Shown one piece after another: positions 15,460 through 23,200 of a stretch of DNA of 64,000 nt. The notes beneath the pieces are model-generated. The model did not search any database, had not been told where the DNA came from, and saw only the letters and a program-made list of their open reading frames with translations. The translations under genes were made by a program, and so were the position numbers. How positions within the stretch are numbered: the stretch's first letter is position 1; each line of letters opens with the position of its first letter. The DNA lies in the NCBI GenBank assembly GCA_965637545.1, contig OZ281494.1, forward strand, positions 24,304,001-24,368,000, written 5' to 3'. The stretch is from Phallusia mammillata. Its lineage: Eukaryota.

Positions 15460-17247
15460 GTTTAACCTTTTTGCTTTGAATGCATTGTTTGTTTGATCAG
15501 CTTGGGACATTTTCCAGATTTTTAGCAAAACTAAGGTACAAGTTACTACTTGCAACCCACCTCAAGAAGTACCAAATTACGCAGTGTTCTTTTGACATCT
15601 AAGTTTTTCAACTAAATTTGCAAACTTTCGCAATAATTGTGCAAAAAAGGGCATCATTATAGCACTCCAAATCAGAATGGACACAAAAACAAGCAAACGT
15701 ACTTCTGCACAAAAACACTGCGCCACGTCACTTGGCGATTAGCATTCCCGCCCTTTTAGTTGTAGTTCGAATTCGAATATGTACACGAAATTGATTTCCA
15801 TGAAAAAAATAAAACGATGTATGTTTAAATTATTCTACTTGTCAATCAATCGTTTATTTTTAGCGAACGCAAATTTTAAATTGAAAACAAATATGATGGC
15901 AGGAAGGCATCGTATTAACCTAACGGTTTTCGAGTGAATATACCCCCTTAAAAAAACATAACTAATTGAGTATAGTTTCAGGTTTGCATGTTTCATAAAA
16001 GTTTCATTAAACTGGTGTATATCACATATGCAATTTATTCAATAGGCCTATTTTTAAAATAGCCTACACAAATACAAATTTTGTATTTTTCAACTTTTCA
16101 CCTTTTCACCTAATGAGCATAAATCAAAGTGGTGACAATTTTATTACACCAAATTATGTGTGGAAAATAATACACCCTTATATTGGTCTCCTTTCCTGAA
16201 AGAGATGTTGTTTTCTGTCCCTACTTTTTTTCTATCTTATGTAGGTTTGTTCCACACGTTTGGTCAAGATTTCCACACGTGATAGGTTACTCGAAGGTGA
16301 TTTTTCAAAGTAGTATTCGGATGAAATTCTTCGGTATATCTTATCACCCACAAACCCTTTGTCGCGAAGATTTCAAAAAGCAAGCTGATCACCGGAAAGG
16401 CGAGAGCAAAATTATATTTCATAGGATTGTGTTCCACGAAACTCTCAAAACTCTCTTAAAGGCTCATACAGAGTCTTTGTCAGGTCATCTGTTAGTCAGG
16501 TTTTTAGTTAGCATTGAGTTAATTTAGTCAAAAATTCCTCAAAATCATGATTTTTTATTTGACATACAATGGCAAGTTAGAGAAAATGAGAAATAAGCAA
16601 AAAACAAAGAGAAGAAGTTTGTTTGAAAATTATTATCCAATAACTACGACCCGACCAGCGGGTACATATTCCTAAAATAGTTAACAACGAGAGGTATAAC
16701 AGAAACTGTTTAACTTAACTTGGTTTTACTTTGAAATAGTTTTCAAGAAAACTCATGATATGTGCTATATGGTAATAACATACATAACTTACTAAAAGGT
16801 ACTGTTGGATTTCGCCTTTTAAGATTGCAATTTGTTTGCAAAAACATGCAGGTACATCAGCAGATTGAAACATACGTAAACAGGCAGACACTATGATAGT
16901 GGAATCAGTCAGAAATGAGGTAATGCTAATAAGAAAACACAACGGAACAGTAAACAAAAAAGTAAGAACTGAAATTCCTTGTTATAGATCACAAATAATT
17001 GAGTTAAATTCAATTAGATCAAGACAAAAGTGACTTTTATGGTGAAAACTTGCAGCGAAAGGTTTCGTCTCTAGTGAAAACCATAACCTCAAGCTATATT
17101 TGAAAGAAAACTGTAATGTAACATGGCAATATTAAGATGCTGTTGTCTAATATAAAGGGGAATGTTGACTTTATAGGTATGTTGTCTCACGCAACTTATT
17201 TATCAATGTGGCAAAAATGTTTTAACCGCAATCAAAAAATAAGATAT

Positions 17248-20207
17248 TTAAAGTACAGAAGTTTGCTGAGGTTTTTCTGCGGTTAACAAGGGGGCCTGGT
17301 AGGGTCCACTCTCGGTCCCATCTGGGGTTTGAGATTCCCCCGATGAAGTAGATTTACGTTTGCTGCTCGACGATGATGCAAATGATGACGTGGATGACGT
17401 AGTGAGCGCCCTGGAACACGATTGAATGCCGATGGGGCGAGAATATGCGACGACCAAAGCGGGCAAAAGAATACAGGTAAAATAACCTTGGACAAAACTG
17501 TAATCTCGGAAGTTGGCGCAAGATTTTAGCCCCAGTGGAAGACCTGGGATCCGCCCCACATGGTATGCGTAAAAAGGAGCATAACAGACGAAGCACACTG
17601 CACAAATTAGGGCCACCCAGACTCCGGCGGGCATACAGGGACGCATTTGGCGCTTATTGTTGCGGGATGAATTTTTATGGCGTACCGCTGTCGGTTCGGA
17701 ATATGCGTTTTGTGGTACCAGGACTGAATGTGGCGTCATAAGGACTTTGTTAAGAATCCACAACACAAAGACGGCGAGAAGTGGGAGCAAAAAGGTTGCC
17801 ACAAAAGTCACAATCAGCCACGTCATATAAGGAGGATTGTCAGCGTCTTTGCACTCTATAACATGCTCCTGCACTTCCGCCTGGAACGGGATTTCCGGAA
17901 GAGGGTAGTGCTCCAATTCGTAATCATAGTACTCCATATCATCCTCCGCAAAAGAATCGGACTGTTCGTAATGATCTTCTTTCTGATCGGGAAGAGGAAG
18001 TTGGAAGACCAGCTCGCATGTATTGATTTTTCCCAAATTCTCAACCTCGGAAAATACAAGCATTGGTGCAGCGAAAGCAAGGGAAAACACCCAACCAAAC
18101 ACCACCGCTGCGATTTCTAGGATTGTGCGTGTGATGTCAGTGATACGTGGACGCTTACGTAGTATGACGTAGTCGGCGCAGAGCGTGACGGTGAAGTAAG
18201 CCTGGGCGAAGATTGCAAGAGCCTTCACGCAGTTAACCAACTGTGAAAAAGAAAAAAAAGATTTAGTGCAAAGTAGAAAATAACTCGTAACAACATAAGT
18301 TTAAAACAAAATAGTCATTAATTTAAATATGTCAAAAAAGAAATCGTTAGGTGGCACCAGAAGTCAAAACACGGAAGGTTTTGCACTTGTAATTTTTGGG
18401 TTTAAAGTCCAAACAAATGGGCCAAGCACAAAATAAGTTGAAAAGTTTGTTGCAACCCACCACAGACACATGCATTTTATCTCCAGTTGATCATAAATTC
18501 ACTGCTGCTTACATGCAGAAACCCATACTAATATGAATTAAGATGTTACCATTTTTATAAAGTGACAGTTTTGACGTTTGAAAATAAAGGTGTAAGCCAA
18601 GGAAAATTAACCGATATTATGTGATATTTATGCTCCTGTATGCAAATTTTTTTCTTCTATTTTAATTTTTTTTTTCTTTGTTTAATACACGCAACACGTT
18701 TCCGACTTTGAAAAATATATGGCTAATACGACTGTAGAACATGAGATCAACCCTTATAAGGAGGGAAAAAATAAATAGCCGTAAAATGGCCAAAAAAATT
18801 CGATGTCAGAATACAATTTAGGATGTTGATAATACATTCTGCACCAGGCGCTAAAAACTAGACAGAAACGTATTTTTTTACCTTTATTCCACATTACTAT
18901 TTGATTGGTTCTAGGGCAGCGGTTTTGAAACTAGGGCCAAATGTTTGCGTACTGGTACGCAAAGCAATATCTGTAGAACTGCCAAGAGACCAAGGTTCTA
19001 TAATCTTACTTGTGTTGCAAAGGAACAATTGTTTGCGCATAATCGAATGTCTTAAACTCGTCTGTGATGTCACAAGCTGCTCTTAGATTGATATTGATAA
19101 ACAAGCGAGTTTCTATGTTAATAAAATCCTGAATGTTGCAGTGAGGGTGGAAATGTAGTGACGAATTTTATTTAGCTTGGACCGTAAGTCCAATAGCACA
19201 TCGACCATTCTGTAAATGAAAAAGTTTGAATGCCACTGTCCTTGGCCTGAGCAATAGTCTGTGCGGCCTGAACGAGTGTCGATAAACCGTTTGGCGGCCT
19301 TCACAAACAAAAAGGTTCCCCACCCCTGGTTTAGGCTCACAAAACATAAGGAAGAATTCTTTCTACCCAGACAGCAGCCGCTAAGTCGGGAAGTGGTATT
19401 TGATATTTCCGTGCAACCACGAAAAATTAAACCGGGTACCGAAAATAAAAAAGGAATGTACCAACACCGTAAATAGGTTTGCCGTTTGCCGATTTTTACT
19501 TGGTAGCCTATAACATTGTTATGGGGAGTTAAAAGATACGATCAGAAATGCAGGGTTAATCAAGTCAATTTTGGCAACTCAAAATAGGTTGATTGGTGGC
19601 GCAATGTGTTAATTTATCGTACGATATAAGCGCTAGACGCACCATTGCGTTATGTAAACACTTTTATAGCAGGCTGTGAATGCCTATTTATGCTTACATG
19701 AAATTTATAATATTTTAATCTACATGTTACGTTCAATGTTATCCCCCACCTTACCTTGCACATAATAGATCCGAGCATCCAAGTTTCCAGCAGCCTGTAC
19801 TGCGCCGAAAATCCCATAGACAGAATAAGCAGGAGACATGAAATGCATAAGTTCTGCATGAACAACCTTTGTGAGTACTGCAGAGAACTGCATCGCTGTG
19901 ACACAACCAAGGCCACCACGTTCATTACAGCCCCCGCCACAGCTATGACGAAATACACCAGACTGATGACGTAACGTCGTGATGATGTCATCTCTCCAAT
20001 TTTCTGGTCCAACGATTTTTCAAGTTCTTCGAGACCACCGTGGTCTGCTTCTAAGGGGTTTTCCCCATATTCAGCATCTTCAAACTGGAACTCGTCAAGG
20101 TCGGGGAAGTTGCTTGGTTGTCCGAATGCCGAACTACTGATGCTCAGCAGCAACATCGGTAAAAGCAATGAAGTCATAACGTGTTTTATTTTACCGTTTT
20201 TAAGCAT
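17248..20207 (-). CDS. Orphan class A (rhodopsin-like) GPCR, peptide/chemoattractant-receptor-like, atypical; ~481 aa (471 aa from ATG 20177)
   Basis: Exons 20207-19755 and 18240-17248, separated by a phase-0 intron after WMLGSIMCK. Signal peptide, acidic N-terminus and seven hydrophobic segments with N1.50, C3.25, W4.50, P5.50, CYAP (P6.50) and P7.50. Ser-rich tail ending TSVL. An acceptor near 20229 implies an upstream non-coding exon or trans-splicing. Confidence 0.9.
19245..19328. mobile_element. One end of a hAT MITE (fragment) in the GPCR intron
   Basis: GCGGCC repeats followed by AAAAAGGTTCCCCACCCCTG, a typical Charlie-type terminus. The matching other end was not identified. Confidence 0.5.
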
Positions 20208-23200
20208 TGTGATTTGCCTGCTGTAATCTAGGAAACACAAAGAATTTTGCAATGAGAATAAATCATGTTAAATGTCATCTAAAAAGGAACCACTGTTAAG
20301 CGATGTGACTGCATGTTTTGGTGAAAAATATTTACGTATGCATAACAATATATCCTGAAAATTATACCACAGACCGTTTGATTTGTTTCGCTCAAATGCA
20401 AACAGCATGTAAGTTCTCAGTAACTGCGTAGCAATGATGTTGTTTATTTCTTTAAGCGTAAATTAGAACCGTGGAATATGTAAACAGACAACACGCGAAC
20501 AAAATCACTTAAACGCGAGAAGCTGAAATTTCAGTTATTTTTGCATCGCATAACAGCCGCTATAGGCTATGCGTTGATTACAGTAAACAAGGTAATTTTA
20601 GAGGGATGTGATACAAAAACCAAACCTGGGAAGTATGTAAGGAAGTGGCAGTGAACCAAAAACAAAGATATTGCTTCTTGAAATACAAATAAGTAAGACA
20701 TAACGAGTTGCTTCAATTCCTCAATCTGTTGCCTAAATATTACGTAACATAAGCGTCGTGAAAATTTGTGGTTGGGATCAGTGCGCCACAACTTTTAGGG
20801 ATGAAATTGCAGAGCAACAGTAGACATTAGGAATACAAATTACACACCACGTTCTCAGCTACACCAATAGTCTGGAACTTTCGTAAAATTGGTGATTTAT
20901 AATCCCTTTGATATAAAAAATCATACCATCAAAAACTTTTGTTTGAAATGCTTTAAACGTTTGAAATACTTCATTTAGTGCTCGTGCCACCCAACGTGGC
21001 AATCTTTTTCCCATTTTAGCTGGCCAAACAATTAACAACAACAAGTTGTTCACCTAAGCAATAACTTTGTGGTCAATCTAGCATACCGCACTACTCAACA
21101 CAGACACCCTTCTTAAAGTGCCTCCTGAGTGGCATGTAATTGCCCCTTGACGAGCAAAAACTGTCAGCTGCCATCAATCAAATGCCACTTGAAATTTGAC
21201 AGAGTGTGATGAATCGTTACGCTTTAATGCGCACCAATAAGAACGCCTCGTGCTGGCTTGTCACATTTTTTGGGCGCATAGGAAAGCACTTGAAAGAATT
21301 ATTGTCATACTTCGGACTCTAAAAGCTTGGGCAACGGCCGCAGTAGCTATTCGTAATCACCACCACGGTTGAAACAGACCGCTTAACGCGGGGCTGGTGA
21401 TGATGGGCGCTTGTCATTGATCTGTCATTTTTGCTCTGTTGCCTGTGATAGCGGTGGGTTATGTATAGAGGAGGTTAGTGAAAAATTCCAACCCATTTGG
21501 GGTGTTGGCAAACTTCTCAGCAATGACAAAAAGATTAAATAATGGACTAAATAGAAAATTTACCTTGAATAAAACCAAGTGGCCAAAGCTAAAACATATA
21601 AATGCATGACATTATTTTTGATATACTTGCCACCTATCTTTCATGTTTTTTGTCCTTATTTGTCATGGGGTGACAGATACTGGAATAAATATCCCATTAA
21701 AATGTGAGAATATGCTTAACTAGGGTTTCCAAAGCATTTCATACATTTTCGTACGCTTATGTCTTCAGCGTAACTAACTTGAAATGTCACTTGGTAAATG
21801 TCGGCAAAGGTTTACAAAAGCCAAGTGAGTATTTAATTCAGCGACTTTACATTGAATGCAAGACGGTATTCAAACCTATATGGATATCTGTATTACAAAT
21901 GTATGATGTGAAATGTAAAGTAATGGCGGTACGTTCGCTTTATTTCAAGTTTTTTTATCGTTCGCTTAGTCGTGTTCGCTGCTCCAAATTTTTGGTTTAG
22001 AAGCTCTGTTTAGTGGTTTGTCATGCTGTTTATTAAGTCTAAAAATGTGCACCGGTTTTTACGGAATTCACGATTAAGTGATGATTCAGGCGTGTGAAAA
22101 TTCACATGTGGTTTGCATATAATTGCTGCCTTCTCAATACAAATGGCGATGACTTGTACTGAGAAACGATATATGAGACTAAATTTACGTTCGAAACGTG
22201 TTTTTTCTGTACACTGTCATTTGTTTTACATTACAATTCACATATACTGCACACATTGGTCCTATATACAGCACCTTATTACTAGTTACAAATGCCACAG
22301 TTATTTTTGACCTAACGGTGCACATGAAAAACAGCAATAGCTTTAGAAGCTAACGGAAAAAGATGGGCGAATTCCTTTGAAAGGTGCAAAACACTTTTAA
22401 GCAAAAACGTTGATACAAATTACTGACCAAGATAACACACTAACATTTAAAAAAGACGTTTCGTCGACACTAGTTCAAAATATATTCAAGGGTATTTACT
22501 GTGAAAACCATTTAATAAATGTACGCAACTAAAACAAAAGATTCGTCGAAACGTTATATTTTACTCAAATATATTTTTTCTATTATACATAATATTTTCA
22601 TGAAATATTAACGTCAATTAATTAGTAAACCATTATACCAAAAATCGATCCAAAGTGCAAATAAATAAACTGAGATAAAATCGGCGCATTTGCTGGATTG
22701 CGAGATGTACTGAACCTCAGAATATAATTTATTCGTAAAAAAAAATGACACAAACTAATAATTGTCAAAAATCACCAAATCTTTGCACCCAAGTCTAGTC
22801 AATAAACGCGACCAACGAACCAACGCCCTAACCCACATTGGCTTTAAATTTGTTTGCATCCAAATATTTCAACACTATAACATCACACTTCCATGCGTTT
22901 GGACAGCACGAAGCATTTTGAGTCAATTCAGCAAAGATTGTCACCGCGTAAATAAAATCACATCACGTACCCGGCCGCCAGAGGACGTGACGTCATCACA
23001 ATCAAACCCCCTACCCACGACATTTCCTCACATGCACATTGTCGGGTGGACTATTGTGTCACAGCACGCGATAGGAAATAACAAACAGTGATTGGCACAT
23101 GTATATTCCCATTGTAAATGCGAGGCTACACTTAACATTTAACTGAAGTTCAATAACCTTGGCAACAACATAGGACCGTGTGACTAATAGGTTACCCTAA

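What the first reader, a model, noticed from the sequence alone, without database searches (positions are those of the whole stretch)
17248..20207. Atypical GPCR: activation switches erased, structural scaffold retained (candidate decoy or arrestin-biased receptor)
Seen: numbering from C3.25, DRY reads D-Y-V (R3.50 to Y, 18174-18166). TM2 LAxAD reads LCISC (D2.50 to C), Y5.58 is W, W6.48 is Y, and NPxxY reads LPALV (N7.49 to L, Y7.53 to V). N1.50, C3.25, W4.50, P5.50, P6.50 and P7.50 are intact, and the ORF is unbroken with good splice sites. The tail has a dense Ser/Thr cluster (TTSSTSSFASSSSSKRKSTSS) and ends in a class I PDZ-type motif (TSVL). Known: D2.50, R3.50, Y5.58 and NPxxY drive G-protein activation in class A GPCRs, and altered DRY/NPxxY motifs characterise atypical receptors such as the ACKRs and C5aR2. 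Inference: a G-protein-uncoupled scavenging or arrestin-biased receptor in an invertebrate chordate.
Basis: partly seen in the sequence, partly recalled or inferred. Interest (0 to 1): 0.75.

Follow-up and report, generated by a model that had tools for sequence, protein, structure and literature searches.

The report
Conserved sea-squirt receptor lacking activation switches
This sea-squirt gene encodes an expressed, evolutionarily conserved seven-helix receptor that has lost the residues such receptors normally use to switch on G proteins, so it probably binds a ligand without signalling in the usual way.

Summary
A two-exon gene on the minus strand (exon 1 20207-19755, GT..AG intron, exon 2 18240-17248) encodes a 481-aa class A GPCR. 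It matches a Phallusia mammillata database protein auto-named "kappa-type opioid receptor". RNA-like contigs from two studies join the exons exactly as predicted, and one carries the end of the ascidian spliced leader.

D2.50, R3.50, Y5.58, N7.49 and Y7.53 are replaced, while N1.50, C3.25, W4.50 and the three prolines are kept. The same losses occur in orthologues from Ciona intestinalis, C. savignyi, Clavelina and unnamed relatives, so this is an old clade under purifying selection, not a decaying copy. W6.48Y and the PDZ-type end are not clade-wide. The Ser/Thr block SSTSSF(A/T)SSS is shared by three species.

The clade sits on a long stem inside a tunicate family of somatostatin/opioid/galanin-like receptors. 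That family has a long acidic, Tyr-rich ECL2 and an extra cysteine pair, and its other members keep DRY and NPxxY. The clade is therefore not related by descent to ACKRs or C5aR2.

The clade also carries its own conserved polar residues, so the core looks rewired rather than merely eroded. Loss of G-protein coupling and a scavenger or arrestin role are inferred, not tested. I found no description in print.

The parts
20228..20229 (-). AG of the spliced-leader trans-splice acceptor. The mature 5'UTR is then 20227-20208.
   Evidence: The contig of run X4 runs to 20229 and continues with 9 letters that are not in the genome. Read on the minus strand and followed by the genomic AG, they equal the last 11 letters of the 16-nt Ciona spliced leader in Table 1 of PMC1488885.
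19755..20207 (-). Exon 1 coding part, 151 codons: signal-peptide-like start, acidic N-terminus, TM1, ICL1, TM2, ECL1, up to C3.25-K3.26.
   Evidence: Translation. Pfam 7tm_1 profile positions 2-59. RNA-like contigs cover 19755-20159 or 19755-20229.
19836..19838 (-). Codon 124, Cys at position 2.50 where the sodium-site Asp normally sits.
   Evidence: Position 2.50 is C or S in 7 of 7 clade rows, D in 17 of 18 canonical tunicate rows and D in 44 of 44 other rows.
18241..19754 (-). Single intron, 1514 nt, GT..AG, phase 0.
   Evidence: The joint 18240|19755 (skips 1514, ends CT..AC on the plus strand) appears in contigs of X1, X2 and X4 and is absent from the DNA-like run X9. The intron is at the same position and phase in the L003 orthologue.
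18799..19330 (.). Dispersed repeat of about 530 bp inside the intron. It is not part of the receptor.
   Evidence: One search lists 42 matches in the genome: the locus itself, 39 further near-full-length copies at 88-96% identity, and two partial matches at 75-79%. There were 595 first-look candidates, of which 40 were scored. Contig depth is in the thousands in run X9. No inverted repeat of 14 nt or more.
17248..18240 (-). Exon 2 coding part, 330 codons plus stop: TM3 to the C-terminus.
   Evidence: Translation. Pfam 7tm_1 profile positions 61-144. RNA-like contigs cover it.
18166..18174 (-). D-Y-V in place of DRY (3.49-3.51).
   Evidence: Position 3.50 is Y in 5 and I in 1 of 6 clade rows. 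It is R in 18 of 18 canonical tunicate rows and 44 of 44 other rows.
17854..18006 (-). ECL2 insert (residues 230-280). It is acidic and Tyr-rich and is bounded by C226 and C281.
   Evidence: The 48 residues between the flanking anchor motifs hold 15 D/E, 1 K/R and 5 Y. The region is disordered in the AF2 model. The W4.50-P5.50 distance is 103 residues, against about 50-56 in ordinary relatives.
17452..17466 (-). L-P-A-L-V in place of NPxxY (7.49-7.53).
   Evidence: Position 7.49 is L or F in 5 of 5 clade rows and N in 18 of 18 and 44 of 44 comparison rows. Position 7.53 is never Y in the 5 clade rows.
17341..17403 (-). Ser/Thr cluster of the proximal tail (residues 431-451).
   Evidence: The block SSTSSF(A/T)SSS is shared with the L003 species and Ciona intestinalis. 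The tail stretch 422-450 is 21 of 29 identical to the L003 species.
17251..17262 (-). C-terminal TSVL (class I PDZ-type by recalled consensus).
   Evidence: Conserved only in the L003 species (SSV then TGA), not in Ciona or Clavelina.
17110..17247 (-). 3'UTR, at least this far.
   Evidence: RNA-like contigs of X1 and X2 reach 17110 and 17112.

Best explanation
Shown. The gene encodes an expressed orphan class A GPCR that is conserved across ascidians. It descends from a tunicate-specific family of somatostatin/opioid/galanin-like receptors with a long acidic ECL2. On one long stem branch it lost the sodium-site Asp (D2.50), the DRY arginine, Y5.58 and both polar residues of NPxxY. It has since evolved under purifying selection.

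Inferred mechanism. The outer face still docks a ligand of the kind its canonical paralogues bind. The evidence is a signal peptide, an acidic Tyr-rich N-terminus and ECL2 insert, both disulfide cysteines plus the family's extra cysteine pair, and K3.32. The ligand is probably a basic peptide or small protein.

The inner face cannot activate G proteins. It presents instead a conserved ICL1, a basic ICL2 (DYVxLRKRP), a TM7 end (AYSRP) with no predicted helix 8, and a conserved Ser/Thr block. I infer that this block is phosphorylated and recruits the single ascidian arrestin. The receptor would then work by internalisation, scavenging or arrestin-type signalling, and would shape the ligand supply to canonical paralogues.
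For: Expression and gene model. Contigs of 3 runs from 2 studies join 18240|19755 exactly. The DNA-like run does not, and one contig carries the spliced-leader end. A 481-aa Phallusia mammillata database protein matches at 99%.

Switch losses. Alignments give these counts:

| Position | Clade rows | Canonical tunicate rows | Other rows |
|---|---|---|---|
| 2.50 | D in 0 of 7 | D in 17 of 18 | D in 44 of 44 |
| 3.50 | R in 0 of 6 | R in 18 of 18 | R in 44 of 44 |
| 7.49 | N in 0 of 5 | N in 18 of 18 | N in 44 of 44 |
| 7.53 | Y in 0 of 5 | Y in 16 of 18 | Y in 43 of 44 |
| 5.58 | Y in 1 of 5 | Y in 18 of 18 | Y in 34 of 44 |

Conservation.
- Orthologues exist in Clavelina, Ciona intestinalis and C. 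savignyi (names) and in unnamed contigs.
- The clade has 100/100 support, and its internal order fits the species relationships as I recall them: Clavelina outside Phallusia plus the two Ciona species.
- Against the L003 species, 207 of 468 residues are identical. Third positions of four-fold codons at identical residues match at only 32 of 91, against 0.25 expected by chance.
- Identity is uneven. TM1-TM2 is 43/64 with Ciona, TM7 is 22/31 and the tail block 21/29 with L003. The ECL2 insert is 4/40 to 6/29 and ICL3 2/29 to 8/32.
- The 8 SNPs seen in RNA contigs split 5 synonymous to 3 non-synonymous, over 333.7 S sites and 1109.3 N sites. That gives pN/pS of about 0.18.
- Phallusia-Ciona identity in the TM core (60-67%) equals that of a canonical paralogue's exons (64-68%).

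Descent. The clade is nested in the long-ECL2 tunicate set (100/99*) and is sister to P0017+P0019 at 93/88. It shares C281 and C392 with that set (5/5 clade rows; 17/17 and 18/18 canonical rows). None of the 44 other rows has a Cys at either column.

Fold. The AF2 TM core has pLDDT above 90, with 7 helices and an ECL2 hairpin. Foldseek top hits are SSTR1, MOR, SSTR2 and GALR2, with target-normalised TM-score (TMt) 0.75-0.81.

Ligand face. N-terminus and ECL2 carry net charge of about -12 to -14 with Tyr next to acidic residues. Composition is conserved but sequence is not. K3.32 is present in 6 of 6 clade rows.

Arrestin. A passage of PMC5501109 reports one Ciona arrestin with visual and non-visual features.
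Against: No functional test was possible. The loss of coupling is inferred from what these residues do in other class A receptors (established knowledge, recalled).

The inner face is conserved (ICL1, ICL2, TM7 end), and that would also fit an unconventional transducer, even a G protein.

The PDZ-type end is present in only 2 of 4 complete C-termini. The Clavelina tail keeps only a looser Ser/Thr-rich stretch.

The tissue and stage of the RNA runs are coded and unknown. The runs are labelled 'RNA? (a guess)'.

The sister relation to P0017+P0019 is not starred, and the stem is long (1.86), so long-branch effects on the exact position are possible.

No Styela orthologue appeared among the named hits, although Styela canonical paralogues did. 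The clade may therefore not be present in all ascidians.

The SNP count is small.
Confidence: 0.55

Rival explanations
1. It is still a signalling GPCR that couples to a G protein, or to another direct transducer, through a rewired core. The clade-specific polar residues (Y3.50, Q2.44, Q3.39, E4.42, Q7.41, Y7.56) would replace the lost sodium-site/DRY/NPxxY network.
For: The replacements are conserved, not random: Q2.44 in 7 of 8 rows, Q3.39 in 6 of 6, Y3.50 in 5 of 6, E4.42 in 5 of 6, Q7.41 in 4 of 5, Y7.56 in 4 of 5. ICL1, ICL2 and the TM7 end are among the best conserved parts. P5.50, P6.50 and P7.50 are kept, and W6.48 is kept in 5 of 6 rows.
Against: R3.50, Y5.58 and Y7.53 make the direct and water-mediated contacts that open the G-protein pocket in known class A structures (recalled, established). 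All three are missing together. The AF2 model shows no helix 8. Natural receptors with a lost DRY arginine that have been studied (C5aR2, ACKR1; recalled) do not couple.
Confidence: 0.17
2. It is a ligand-independent accessory subunit. It would pair with canonical long-ECL2 paralogues in the membrane and tune their trafficking or signalling, rather than binding a ligand itself.
For: It belongs to the same family as about a dozen or more canonical paralogues in the genome (one search lists 19 exon matches). The conserved TM1-TM2 and TM7 surfaces could be dimer interfaces. The ECL2 insert and N-terminus are poorly conserved in sequence.
Against: The acidic, Tyr-rich make-up of the N-terminus and ECL2 is kept in every orthologue. 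So are the pocket lysine K3.32, both disulfide cysteines and the extra cysteine pair. That pattern is what a maintained ligand site predicts. The conserved Ser/Thr block points to regulated phosphorylation of this protein itself.
Confidence: 0.15
3. It is a decaying duplicate (expressed pseudogene) of a canonical receptor.
For: Many hallmark residues are lost. The stem branch is long (1.86-2.03). The whole-database search found few relatives: 307 proteins at E up to 0.001 and 18 at E up to 1e-10.
Against: The reading frames are intact in at least 4 named species plus unnamed ones. The same replacements recur in them. The intron position is conserved. Silent sites are near saturation while 44% of residues, and 60-70% in the TM cores, are kept. 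There are 5 synonymous and 3 non-synonymous SNPs. The gene is correctly spliced and trans-spliced.
Confidence: 0.02

Closest known systems
Canonical tunicate long-ECL2 receptors. Examples: Ciona intestinalis XP_002128959.1 'neuropeptides B/W receptor type 2-like' (a near-identical record of the same cluster, XP_078492647.1, is named 'galanin receptor type 1-like'); Styela clava 'somatostatin receptor type 2-like'; Phallusia A0A6F9D7B8 'C3a anaphylatoxin chemotactic receptor-like'. All names are automatic.
   Same: Same family by tree (100/99*). Both have an ECL2 about 50 residues longer than usual, an acidic Tyr-rich insert, an extra cysteine before TM5 and one in ECL3, and an RD(Y/F)xF-type start of TM7. 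K3.32 is shared with 8 of 18 canonical rows.
   Different: The canonical members keep D2.50, DRY, Y5.58 and NPxxY. Only P0017 and P0019 differ, reading NPxxN. They lack the clade's Q2.44, Q3.39, E4.42, Q7.41 and Y7.56.
Vertebrate atypical receptors: C5aR2 (C5L2), ACKR1-4, CCRL2, GPR1/CMKLR2.
   Same: What it looks like (properties of the vertebrate receptors are recalled). Both have a class A scaffold with the DRY arginine or its surroundings altered, acidic Tyr-bearing ligand-docking segments and a Ser/Thr-rich tail. Both are kept under selection next to signalling paralogues.
   Different: There is no descent from them. The gene sits in a tunicate-only clade. The nearest solved relatives by sequence are SSTR1, GRPR and CCR1, with TM1-TM4 only aligned. 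A passage of PMC10792014 places the origin of chemokine receptors in the vertebrate stem. More switches are lost here (D2.50, Y5.58, N7.49 and Y7.53 as well). The function is untested.
Vertebrate somatostatin, opioid and galanin receptors (SOG cluster).
   Same: They are the nearest solved structures by fold (SSTR1, MOR, SSTR2, GALR2; TMt 0.75-0.81). By sequence, the canonical paralogues match SSTR2 (P0022, 1e-51) and GALR1 (P0017, 2e-27).
   Different: Identity is 13-20%. Only TM1-TM4 align by sequence. Position 3.32 is Lys, where 10 of 44 other hits have Asp. The database name 'kappa-type opioid receptor' is an automatic best-hit label, not orthology.
Ascidian C3a/C5a receptor candidates (CiC3aR, BsC3a/C5aR; PMC7565592).
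   Same: Passages of that paper describe ascidian candidates that all have a large ECL2 rich in Asp and Glu between TM4 and TM5. The family found here has the same trait.
   Different: I could not tell whether those candidates are members of the same family or include this gene. Their identifiers are in Table S2, and supplements are closed. The paper's main text does not mention DRY, NPxxY or C5L2 (0 occurrences each).

Membership tests
Class A (rhodopsin-like) GPCR, Pfam PF00001 7tm_1 | Match to the 7tm_1 profile | tested here: met
   Each exon alone scores 24.2 bits, under the 30.5 whole-protein cut-off, on adjacent profile parts 2-59 and 61-144. The full-length database protein P0001 carries a precomputed PF00001 hit.
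Class A (rhodopsin-like) GPCR, Pfam PF00001 7tm_1 | Seven-helix fold like solved class A receptors | tested here: met
   AF2 gives seven TM helices with pLDDT above 90 and pTM 0.71. Foldseek returns at least 500 PDB GPCR matches, the top ones with TMt 0.75-0.81.
Class A (rhodopsin-like) GPCR, Pfam PF00001 7tm_1 | Structural hallmark residues N1.50, C3.25-ECL2 Cys, W4.50, P5.50, P6.50, P7.50 | tested here: met
   All are present in P0001. N96, C150, W201, C226, P304, P373 and P411 fall in columns that are at least 90% conserved across 71 rows.
Class A (rhodopsin-like) GPCR, Pfam PF00001 7tm_1 | Activation microswitches D2.50, DRY, Y5.58, CWxP, NPxxY (typical of the family, not strictly defining) | tested here: not met
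   The protein reads C, DYV, W, CYAP and LPALV.
Tunicate long-ECL2 SOG-like receptor family | Groups with these receptors in a tree, to the exclusion of other class A hits | tested here: met
   The 24-row set has support 100/99* in the careful tree of 43 rows. The 25-row set has SH-aLRT 100 in the quick tree of 77 rows.
Tunicate long-ECL2 SOG-like receptor family | Long ECL2 with a second cysteine before TM5, plus an ECL3 cysteine | tested here: met
   W4.50-P5.50 is 99-103 residues in the clade, 88-174 in canonical members and about 50-56 in most others. C281 is present in 5/5 clade and 17/17 canonical rows. C392 is present in 5/5 and 18/18. None of the 44 other rows has either.
Atypical chemokine receptors / C5aR2 | Descent from the vertebrate chemokine or anaphylatoxin receptor clades | tested here: not met
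   The gene is nested in a clade whose named members are all tunicate. The best solved relatives by sequence are SSTR1, GRPR and CCR1 at similar weak scores.
Atypical chemokine receptors / C5aR2 | Altered DRY region | tested here: met
   DYV in 5 of 6 clade rows and EIF in 1.
Atypical chemokine receptors / C5aR2 | Binds ligand without G-protein activation; recruits arrestin or scavenges | not testable with these tools
   Needs cell assays.
Kappa opioid receptor (the database name) | Orthology to vertebrate OPRK1 and the Asp3.32 amine anchor (recalled) | tested here: not met
   Position 3.32 is Lys. The protein lies in a tunicate-only clade. KOR does not appear among the 60 solved-structure matches listed.

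The most novel reading that the evidence does not exclude
Ascidians evolved their own non-G-protein 'atypical' receptor, independently of the vertebrate ACKRs and C5aR2, from a somatostatin/opioid/galanin-like family. It kept the ligand-docking outside but replaced the whole sodium-site/DRY/NPxxY network with a new conserved polar core (Y3.50, Q2.44, Q3.39, E4.42, Q7.41, Y7.56) and a phospho-tail. It would act as a scavenger or arrestin-only partner that shapes gradients of a basic peptide or protein ligand shared with its canonical sister receptors. This would be a second, older invention of the decoy-GPCR principle within chordates.
Probability: 0.3. Interest if true: 0.65.

Novelty: new variant of a known kind. 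Interest (0 to 1): 0.45.

Why it matters
Receptors that bind a ligand but do not activate G proteins (ACKRs, C5aR2) are treated as a vertebrate refinement of chemokine and complement signalling. A conserved ascidian receptor that lost more of the activation machinery, in a different receptor family, would show that this design arose more than once in chordates.

It would also provide a natural test of which class A microswitches can be dispensed with. Ciona and Phallusia embryos are transparent, can be electroporated and have a single arrestin, so the question is directly testable there.

The result also corrects a misleading database name ('kappa-type opioid receptor').

Tried and rejected
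I fetched the locus from the metagenome collection instead.

Classical dN/dS.
- The only orthologue DNA I could reach (L003) is too far away. Silent four-fold sites match at 32 of 91 against 0.25 by chance, so dS is saturated.
- I report that comparison and the SNP split instead.
- DNA of the 70%-identical relative P0010 could not be reached.

Searches that added nothing.
- A search with the divergent member P0011 found nothing but itself.
- The profile search of the clade added only the full-length Ciona protein.
- The ESM Atlas gave only generic class A neighbours.
- The earlier notes of this scan hold nothing on class A receptors of this kind.
- No long ORF, and in particular no second receptor exon, lies within 8-12 kb on either side. 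No family member lies in the window.

The weak second hit in the genome (L002) is an exon of a canonical paralogue, not a copy of this gene.

C3a-receptor kinship. Suggested by one automatic name and by PMC7565592. Sequence does not favour it. The 'C3aR-like' Phallusia protein P0022 matches SSTR2 best (1e-51). C3aR appears only at rank 59 of the 60 listed matches for P0017 (7.7e-21).

Literature. No paper on a tunicate GPCR lacking DRY/NPxxY or acting as a decoy was found. These searched only the held library and used only those words.

Papers and what I saw of them.
- Passages only (find mode): PMC7565592, PMC6475428, PMC2396169, PMC10792014, PMC5501109 and PMC1488885 (the last including Table 1).
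- Search listings only: all other titles.
- Supplements not opened, because they are closed: Table S2 of PMC7565592 and the additional files of PMC2396169. They may list this gene or its Ciona orthologue.

The proposed C281-C392 disulfide and the contacts of the new polar residues are therefore untested.


Full report
**What is there**

The finding lies on the minus strand. Exon 1 runs from the ATG at 20207 to 19755 (151 codons). A GT..AG intron of 1514 nt follows. Exon 2 runs from 18240 to the stop at 17248 (330 codons).

Each was searched alone. Pfam 7tm_1 matches both at 24.2 bits on adjacent parts of the profile, positions 2-59 and 61-144, which itself supports the splice.

Exon 2 alone retrieves a 481-aa protein of Phallusia mammillata at 99% identity (CAB3264569.1 / A0A6F9DN61, auto-named 'Kappa-type opioid receptor'). 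Its length equals 151 + 330, and it differs from the window's translation at four residues (5, 132, 249, 340). I used this database protein (P0001) for whole-protein analyses.

The window is at 24.30-24.37 Mb of contig 1 of a 240-Mb genome.

**Is it transcribed as predicted?**

Yes. Contigs of three runs from two studies (X1, X2, X4) lie on both exons and join 18240 to 19755 exactly, skipping 1514 nt with GT..AG ends. The runs are labelled only 'RNA? (a guess)'. The DNA-like run X9 covers the intron and shows no such joint.

These contigs reach 17110 at the 3' side. The X4 contig ends at 20229 with nine extra letters. Together with the genomic AG, these equal the last 11 letters of the 16-nt Ciona spliced leader listed in Table 1 of PMC1488885. 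The mRNA is therefore trans-spliced about 20 nt before the ATG at 20207, which is the first ATG of the mature message.

Tissue and stage are unknown because the run names are coded.

**The motifs**

In a MAFFT alignment of 107 database hits, P0001 reads as follows.

| Position | Residue in P0001 | Status |
|---|---|---|
| N1.50 | N | kept |
| L2.46 | L | kept |
| 2.50 | C | lost (normally D) |
| C3.25 | C | kept |
| 3.49-3.51 | D-Y-V | R3.50 lost |
| W4.50 | W | kept |
| P5.50 | P | kept |
| 5.58 | W | lost (normally Y) |
| 6.48 | Y | changed (normally W) |
| P6.50 | P | kept |
| 7.49 | L | lost (normally N) |
| P7.50 | P | kept |
| 7.53 | V | lost (normally Y) |

The register is secure. D3.49 to the ICL2 proline is +8, and the ECL3 cysteine to P7.50 is +19. 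Both match canonical relatives (my count). The tail holds TTSSTSSFASSSSSKRKSTSS and ends TSVL.

**Relatives**

HMMER scored P0001 against 1.84 billion representative proteins. It found only 307 with E up to 0.001, 18 up to 1e-10 and 6 up to 1e-30. That is few for a class A receptor.

The closest hits form one group.
- P0007: Clavelina lepadiformis, 467 aa.
- P0008: Ciona (H2XNS0), partial.
- P0009: a second Ciona entry (H2YGH0), partial. By recall this is C. savignyi; the listing shows only 'Ciona'.
- P0002 and P0012: the two exons of one gene on metagenome contigs, fetched as L003 and L004.
- P0010 (70% identical to P0001, exon 1 only), P0013 and P0011: unnamed sources.
- P0175: the full-length Ciona intestinalis protein, 446 aa, also auto-named 'kappa-type opioid receptor'. 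A profile search added it.

All of these share the losses. I picked 71 rows from the hits (9 of the clade, 18 canonical long-ECL2 proteins, 44 others). In that alignment the counts are as follows.

| Position | Clade rows | Canonical tunicate rows | Other rows |
|---|---|---|---|
| 2.50 | C or S in 7 of 7 | D in 17 of 18 | D in 44 of 44 |
| 3.50 | Y in 5, I in 1 of 6 | R in 18 of 18 | R in 44 of 44 |
| 7.49 | L or F in 5 of 5 | N in 18 of 18 | N in 44 of 44 |
| 7.53 | never Y in 5 | Y in 16 of 18 | Y in 43 of 44 |
| 5.58 | Y in 1 of 5 | Y in 18 of 18 | Y in 34 of 44 |

W6.48 is kept in 5 of 6 clade rows, so the Y in Phallusia is a private change.

**Selection**

That test was that orthologues keep DRY/NPxxY and this copy decays.

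- In L003 the intron sits at the same place and phase, after C3.25-K.
- Between Phallusia and the L003 species, 207 of 468 aligned residues are identical. Third positions of four-fold codons at identical residues match at only 32 of 91, against 0.25 by chance. Silent sites are near saturation while the protein is held.
- Identity is very uneven. TM1-TM2 is 43/64 with Ciona and 41/64 with L003. ECL1-TM3-ICL2 is 27/45 with Ciona. TM7 is 22/31 and the proximal tail 21/29 with L003. By contrast the ECL2 insert is 4/40 to 6/29 and ICL3 2/29 to 8/32.
- A canonical paralogue (Ciona P0017) matches its Phallusia exons at 64-68%. The atypical receptor is held about as tightly in its core.
- Eight differences between the genome and the RNA contigs split into 5 synonymous and 3 non-synonymous (G5A, A249P, K340R; all outside the helices). 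The sites are 333.7 synonymous and 1109.3 non-synonymous. That gives a ratio of about 0.18. By my own hand arithmetic, three or fewer non-synonymous of eight has a one-sided binomial probability of about 0.02 under neutrality. The numbers are small.

**Descent**

- A quick tree of 77 rows and a careful tree of 43 rows agree. In the careful tree I used 7 clade rows, 17 canonical long-ECL2 rows and 19 others. I left out the exon-1-only fragments P0010 and P0012 and the gappy P0070, and used P0175 in place of P0008.
- The clade is one group (100/100) on a long stem (1.86-2.03 changes per site).
- It lies inside a set of long-ECL2 receptors (100/99*) whose named members are all tunicate.
- Its sister is P0017+P0019 at 93/88, which is not a starred branch. 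That pair already reads NPxxN.
- Within the clade the order is Clavelina, then (Phallusia + L003 species) and (P0175 + P0009, the two Ciona entries). This fits orthology.
- Two characters independent of the tree tie the clade to the family. One is a second ECL2 cysteine just before TM5 (C281). The other is an ECL3 cysteine (C392). They are present in 5/5 clade rows and in 17/17 and 18/18 canonical rows, and in none of the 44 other rows.
- The W4.50-P5.50 distance is 99-103 residues in the clade, 88-174 in the family and about 50-56 in ordinary relatives.

By sequence, the canonical members match solved SSTR2 (P0022, 1e-51) and GALR1, NOP, KOR and SSTR (P0017, 2e-27 and weaker). P0001 itself matches SSTR1, GRPR and CCR1 over TM1-TM4 only.

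The AF2 model has mean pLDDT 74.2, pTM 0.71 and helices above 90. It shows an ECL2 hairpin at 215-228, a disordered insert at 230-280 and no helix 8. Its best structural matches are SSTR1, MOR, SSTR2 and GALR2 (TMt 0.75-0.81).

The gene is thus a derived member of a tunicate somatostatin/opioid/galanin-like expansion. It is not kin of the ACKRs or C5aR2, and it is not a kappa opioid receptor.

Literature context, from passages only.
- Kamesh et al. counted 12 'unclassified chemokine receptor cluster-like' receptors in Ciona (PMC2396169).
- Aleotti et al. place orphan urochordate sequences as sister to the vertebrate chemokine-type groups (PMC10792014).
- Peronato et al. describe ascidian C3a/C5aR candidates with a large acidic ECL2 (PMC7565592). 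Their identifiers are in a supplement that I could not open.

The core is not simply eroded. The clade has its own conserved residues where relatives have others.

| Position | Clade | Relatives |
|---|---|---|
| 2.44 | Q in 7 of 8 | mainly L |
| 3.39 | Q in 6 of 6 | S or G |
| 3.50 | Y | R |
| 4.42 | E in 5 of 6 | T, A or S |
| 7.41 | Q in 4 of 5 | mainly L |
| 7.56 | Y in 4 of 5 | mainly L |

Other conserved parts are ICL1 (QRCxxxQYSQ(R/K)LFMQN), ICL2 (DYVxLRKRP), the TM7 end (AYSRP) and the block SSTSSF(A/T)SSS. This block is shared by Phallusia, the L003 species and Ciona, and is looser in Clavelina.

On the outside, the sequence of the N-terminus and ECL2 insert drifts but their make-up is kept. 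They hold 8-16 acidic against 1-6 basic residues, with Tyr next to acidic residues. The canonical paralogues show the same make-up. K3.32 is kept in 6 of 6 clade rows. An N-terminal hydrophobic, signal-peptide-like stretch is present in every full-length orthologue.

**How it most likely works**

Shown: an expressed, constrained class A receptor of a tunicate family, lacking D2.50, R3.50, Y5.58, N7.49 and Y7.53.

Inferred from what these residues do in other class A receptors (recalled, established): it cannot open a G-protein pocket in the usual way.

Inferred from the kept outer face: it still docks a ligand of the kind its paralogues bind, probably basic.

Inferred from the conserved Ser/Thr block, which matches the recalled arrestin phospho-code patterns 7 and 5 times in Phallusia, and from the single Ciona arrestin reported in a passage of PMC5501109: it is phosphorylated and engages arrestin. 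It would then work by internalisation, scavenging or arrestin-type signalling.

I put this reading at 0.55. The rivals are a rewired but still coupling receptor (0.17), a ligand-independent partner of paralogues (0.15) and a decaying copy (0.02). The rest is unassigned.

**Novelty**

The proteins are in databases under misleading automatic names. I found no paper that describes a tunicate GPCR without DRY/NPxxY or a tunicate decoy receptor (held library only). Supplements that may list the gene were closed.

I rate it a new variant of a known kind, namely atypical class A receptors. It has an independent origin and a more thorough loss of switches. Interest is moderate. Degenerate orphan GPCRs are common, but this one is old, constrained, has an identified canonical sister group, and sits in an experimentally tractable chordate.

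Noticed in passing
window 18799-19330 (inside the intron): Dispersed repeat of about 530 bp. One search lists 42 matches on all large contigs: the locus itself, 39 further near-full-length copies at 88-96% identity, and two partial matches at 75-79%. There were 595 first-look candidates, of which 40 were scored. Contig depth is in the thousands in the DNA-like run. No terminal inverted repeat of 14 nt or more. Short RNA-like contigs also match it, probably from other copies.
   Followed up: partly
window 20228-20229: The mRNA 5' end carries the end of the ascidian 16-nt spliced leader. Phallusia therefore seems to use a leader whose last 11 letters equal Ciona's.
   Followed up: partly
L003 10001-11068, and L004: Two 'metagenome' contigs (59.6 kb and 24 kb) are ascidian nuclear DNA with a spliced orthologue. 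The stored protein P0002 runs 13 residues past the true end because the gene caller read the TGA stop as Trp. In the tree this species is sister to Phallusia (100/96*).
   Followed up: partly
proteins P0017 (Ciona XP_002128959.1 group) and P0019 (Styela): The canonical sister pair of the clade keeps D2.50 and DRY but reads NPxxN (Y7.53 to N). This may be a first step of the same erosion, or an independent change.
   Followed up: no
protein P0037 (337 aa, source unknown): An unrelated class A hit reads N at 2.50 and D-Y-L for DRY but keeps NPxxY.
   Followed up: no
L002 = G000:C6:16975768-16979019: The weak second match to exon 2 (E 7.2e-4, with stops in the read-through) overlaps an exon that matches the canonical P0017 at 41% without stops. 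It is a paralogue's TM6-TM7 exon, not a pseudogene copy of this gene.
   Followed up: partly
G000:C6:17597178-17624561: The Phallusia orthologue of Ciona P0017 is split into several exons (matches at 64-68% identity). A second similar TM6-TM7 exon lies about 23 kb away. This may be a tandem pair.
   Followed up: no
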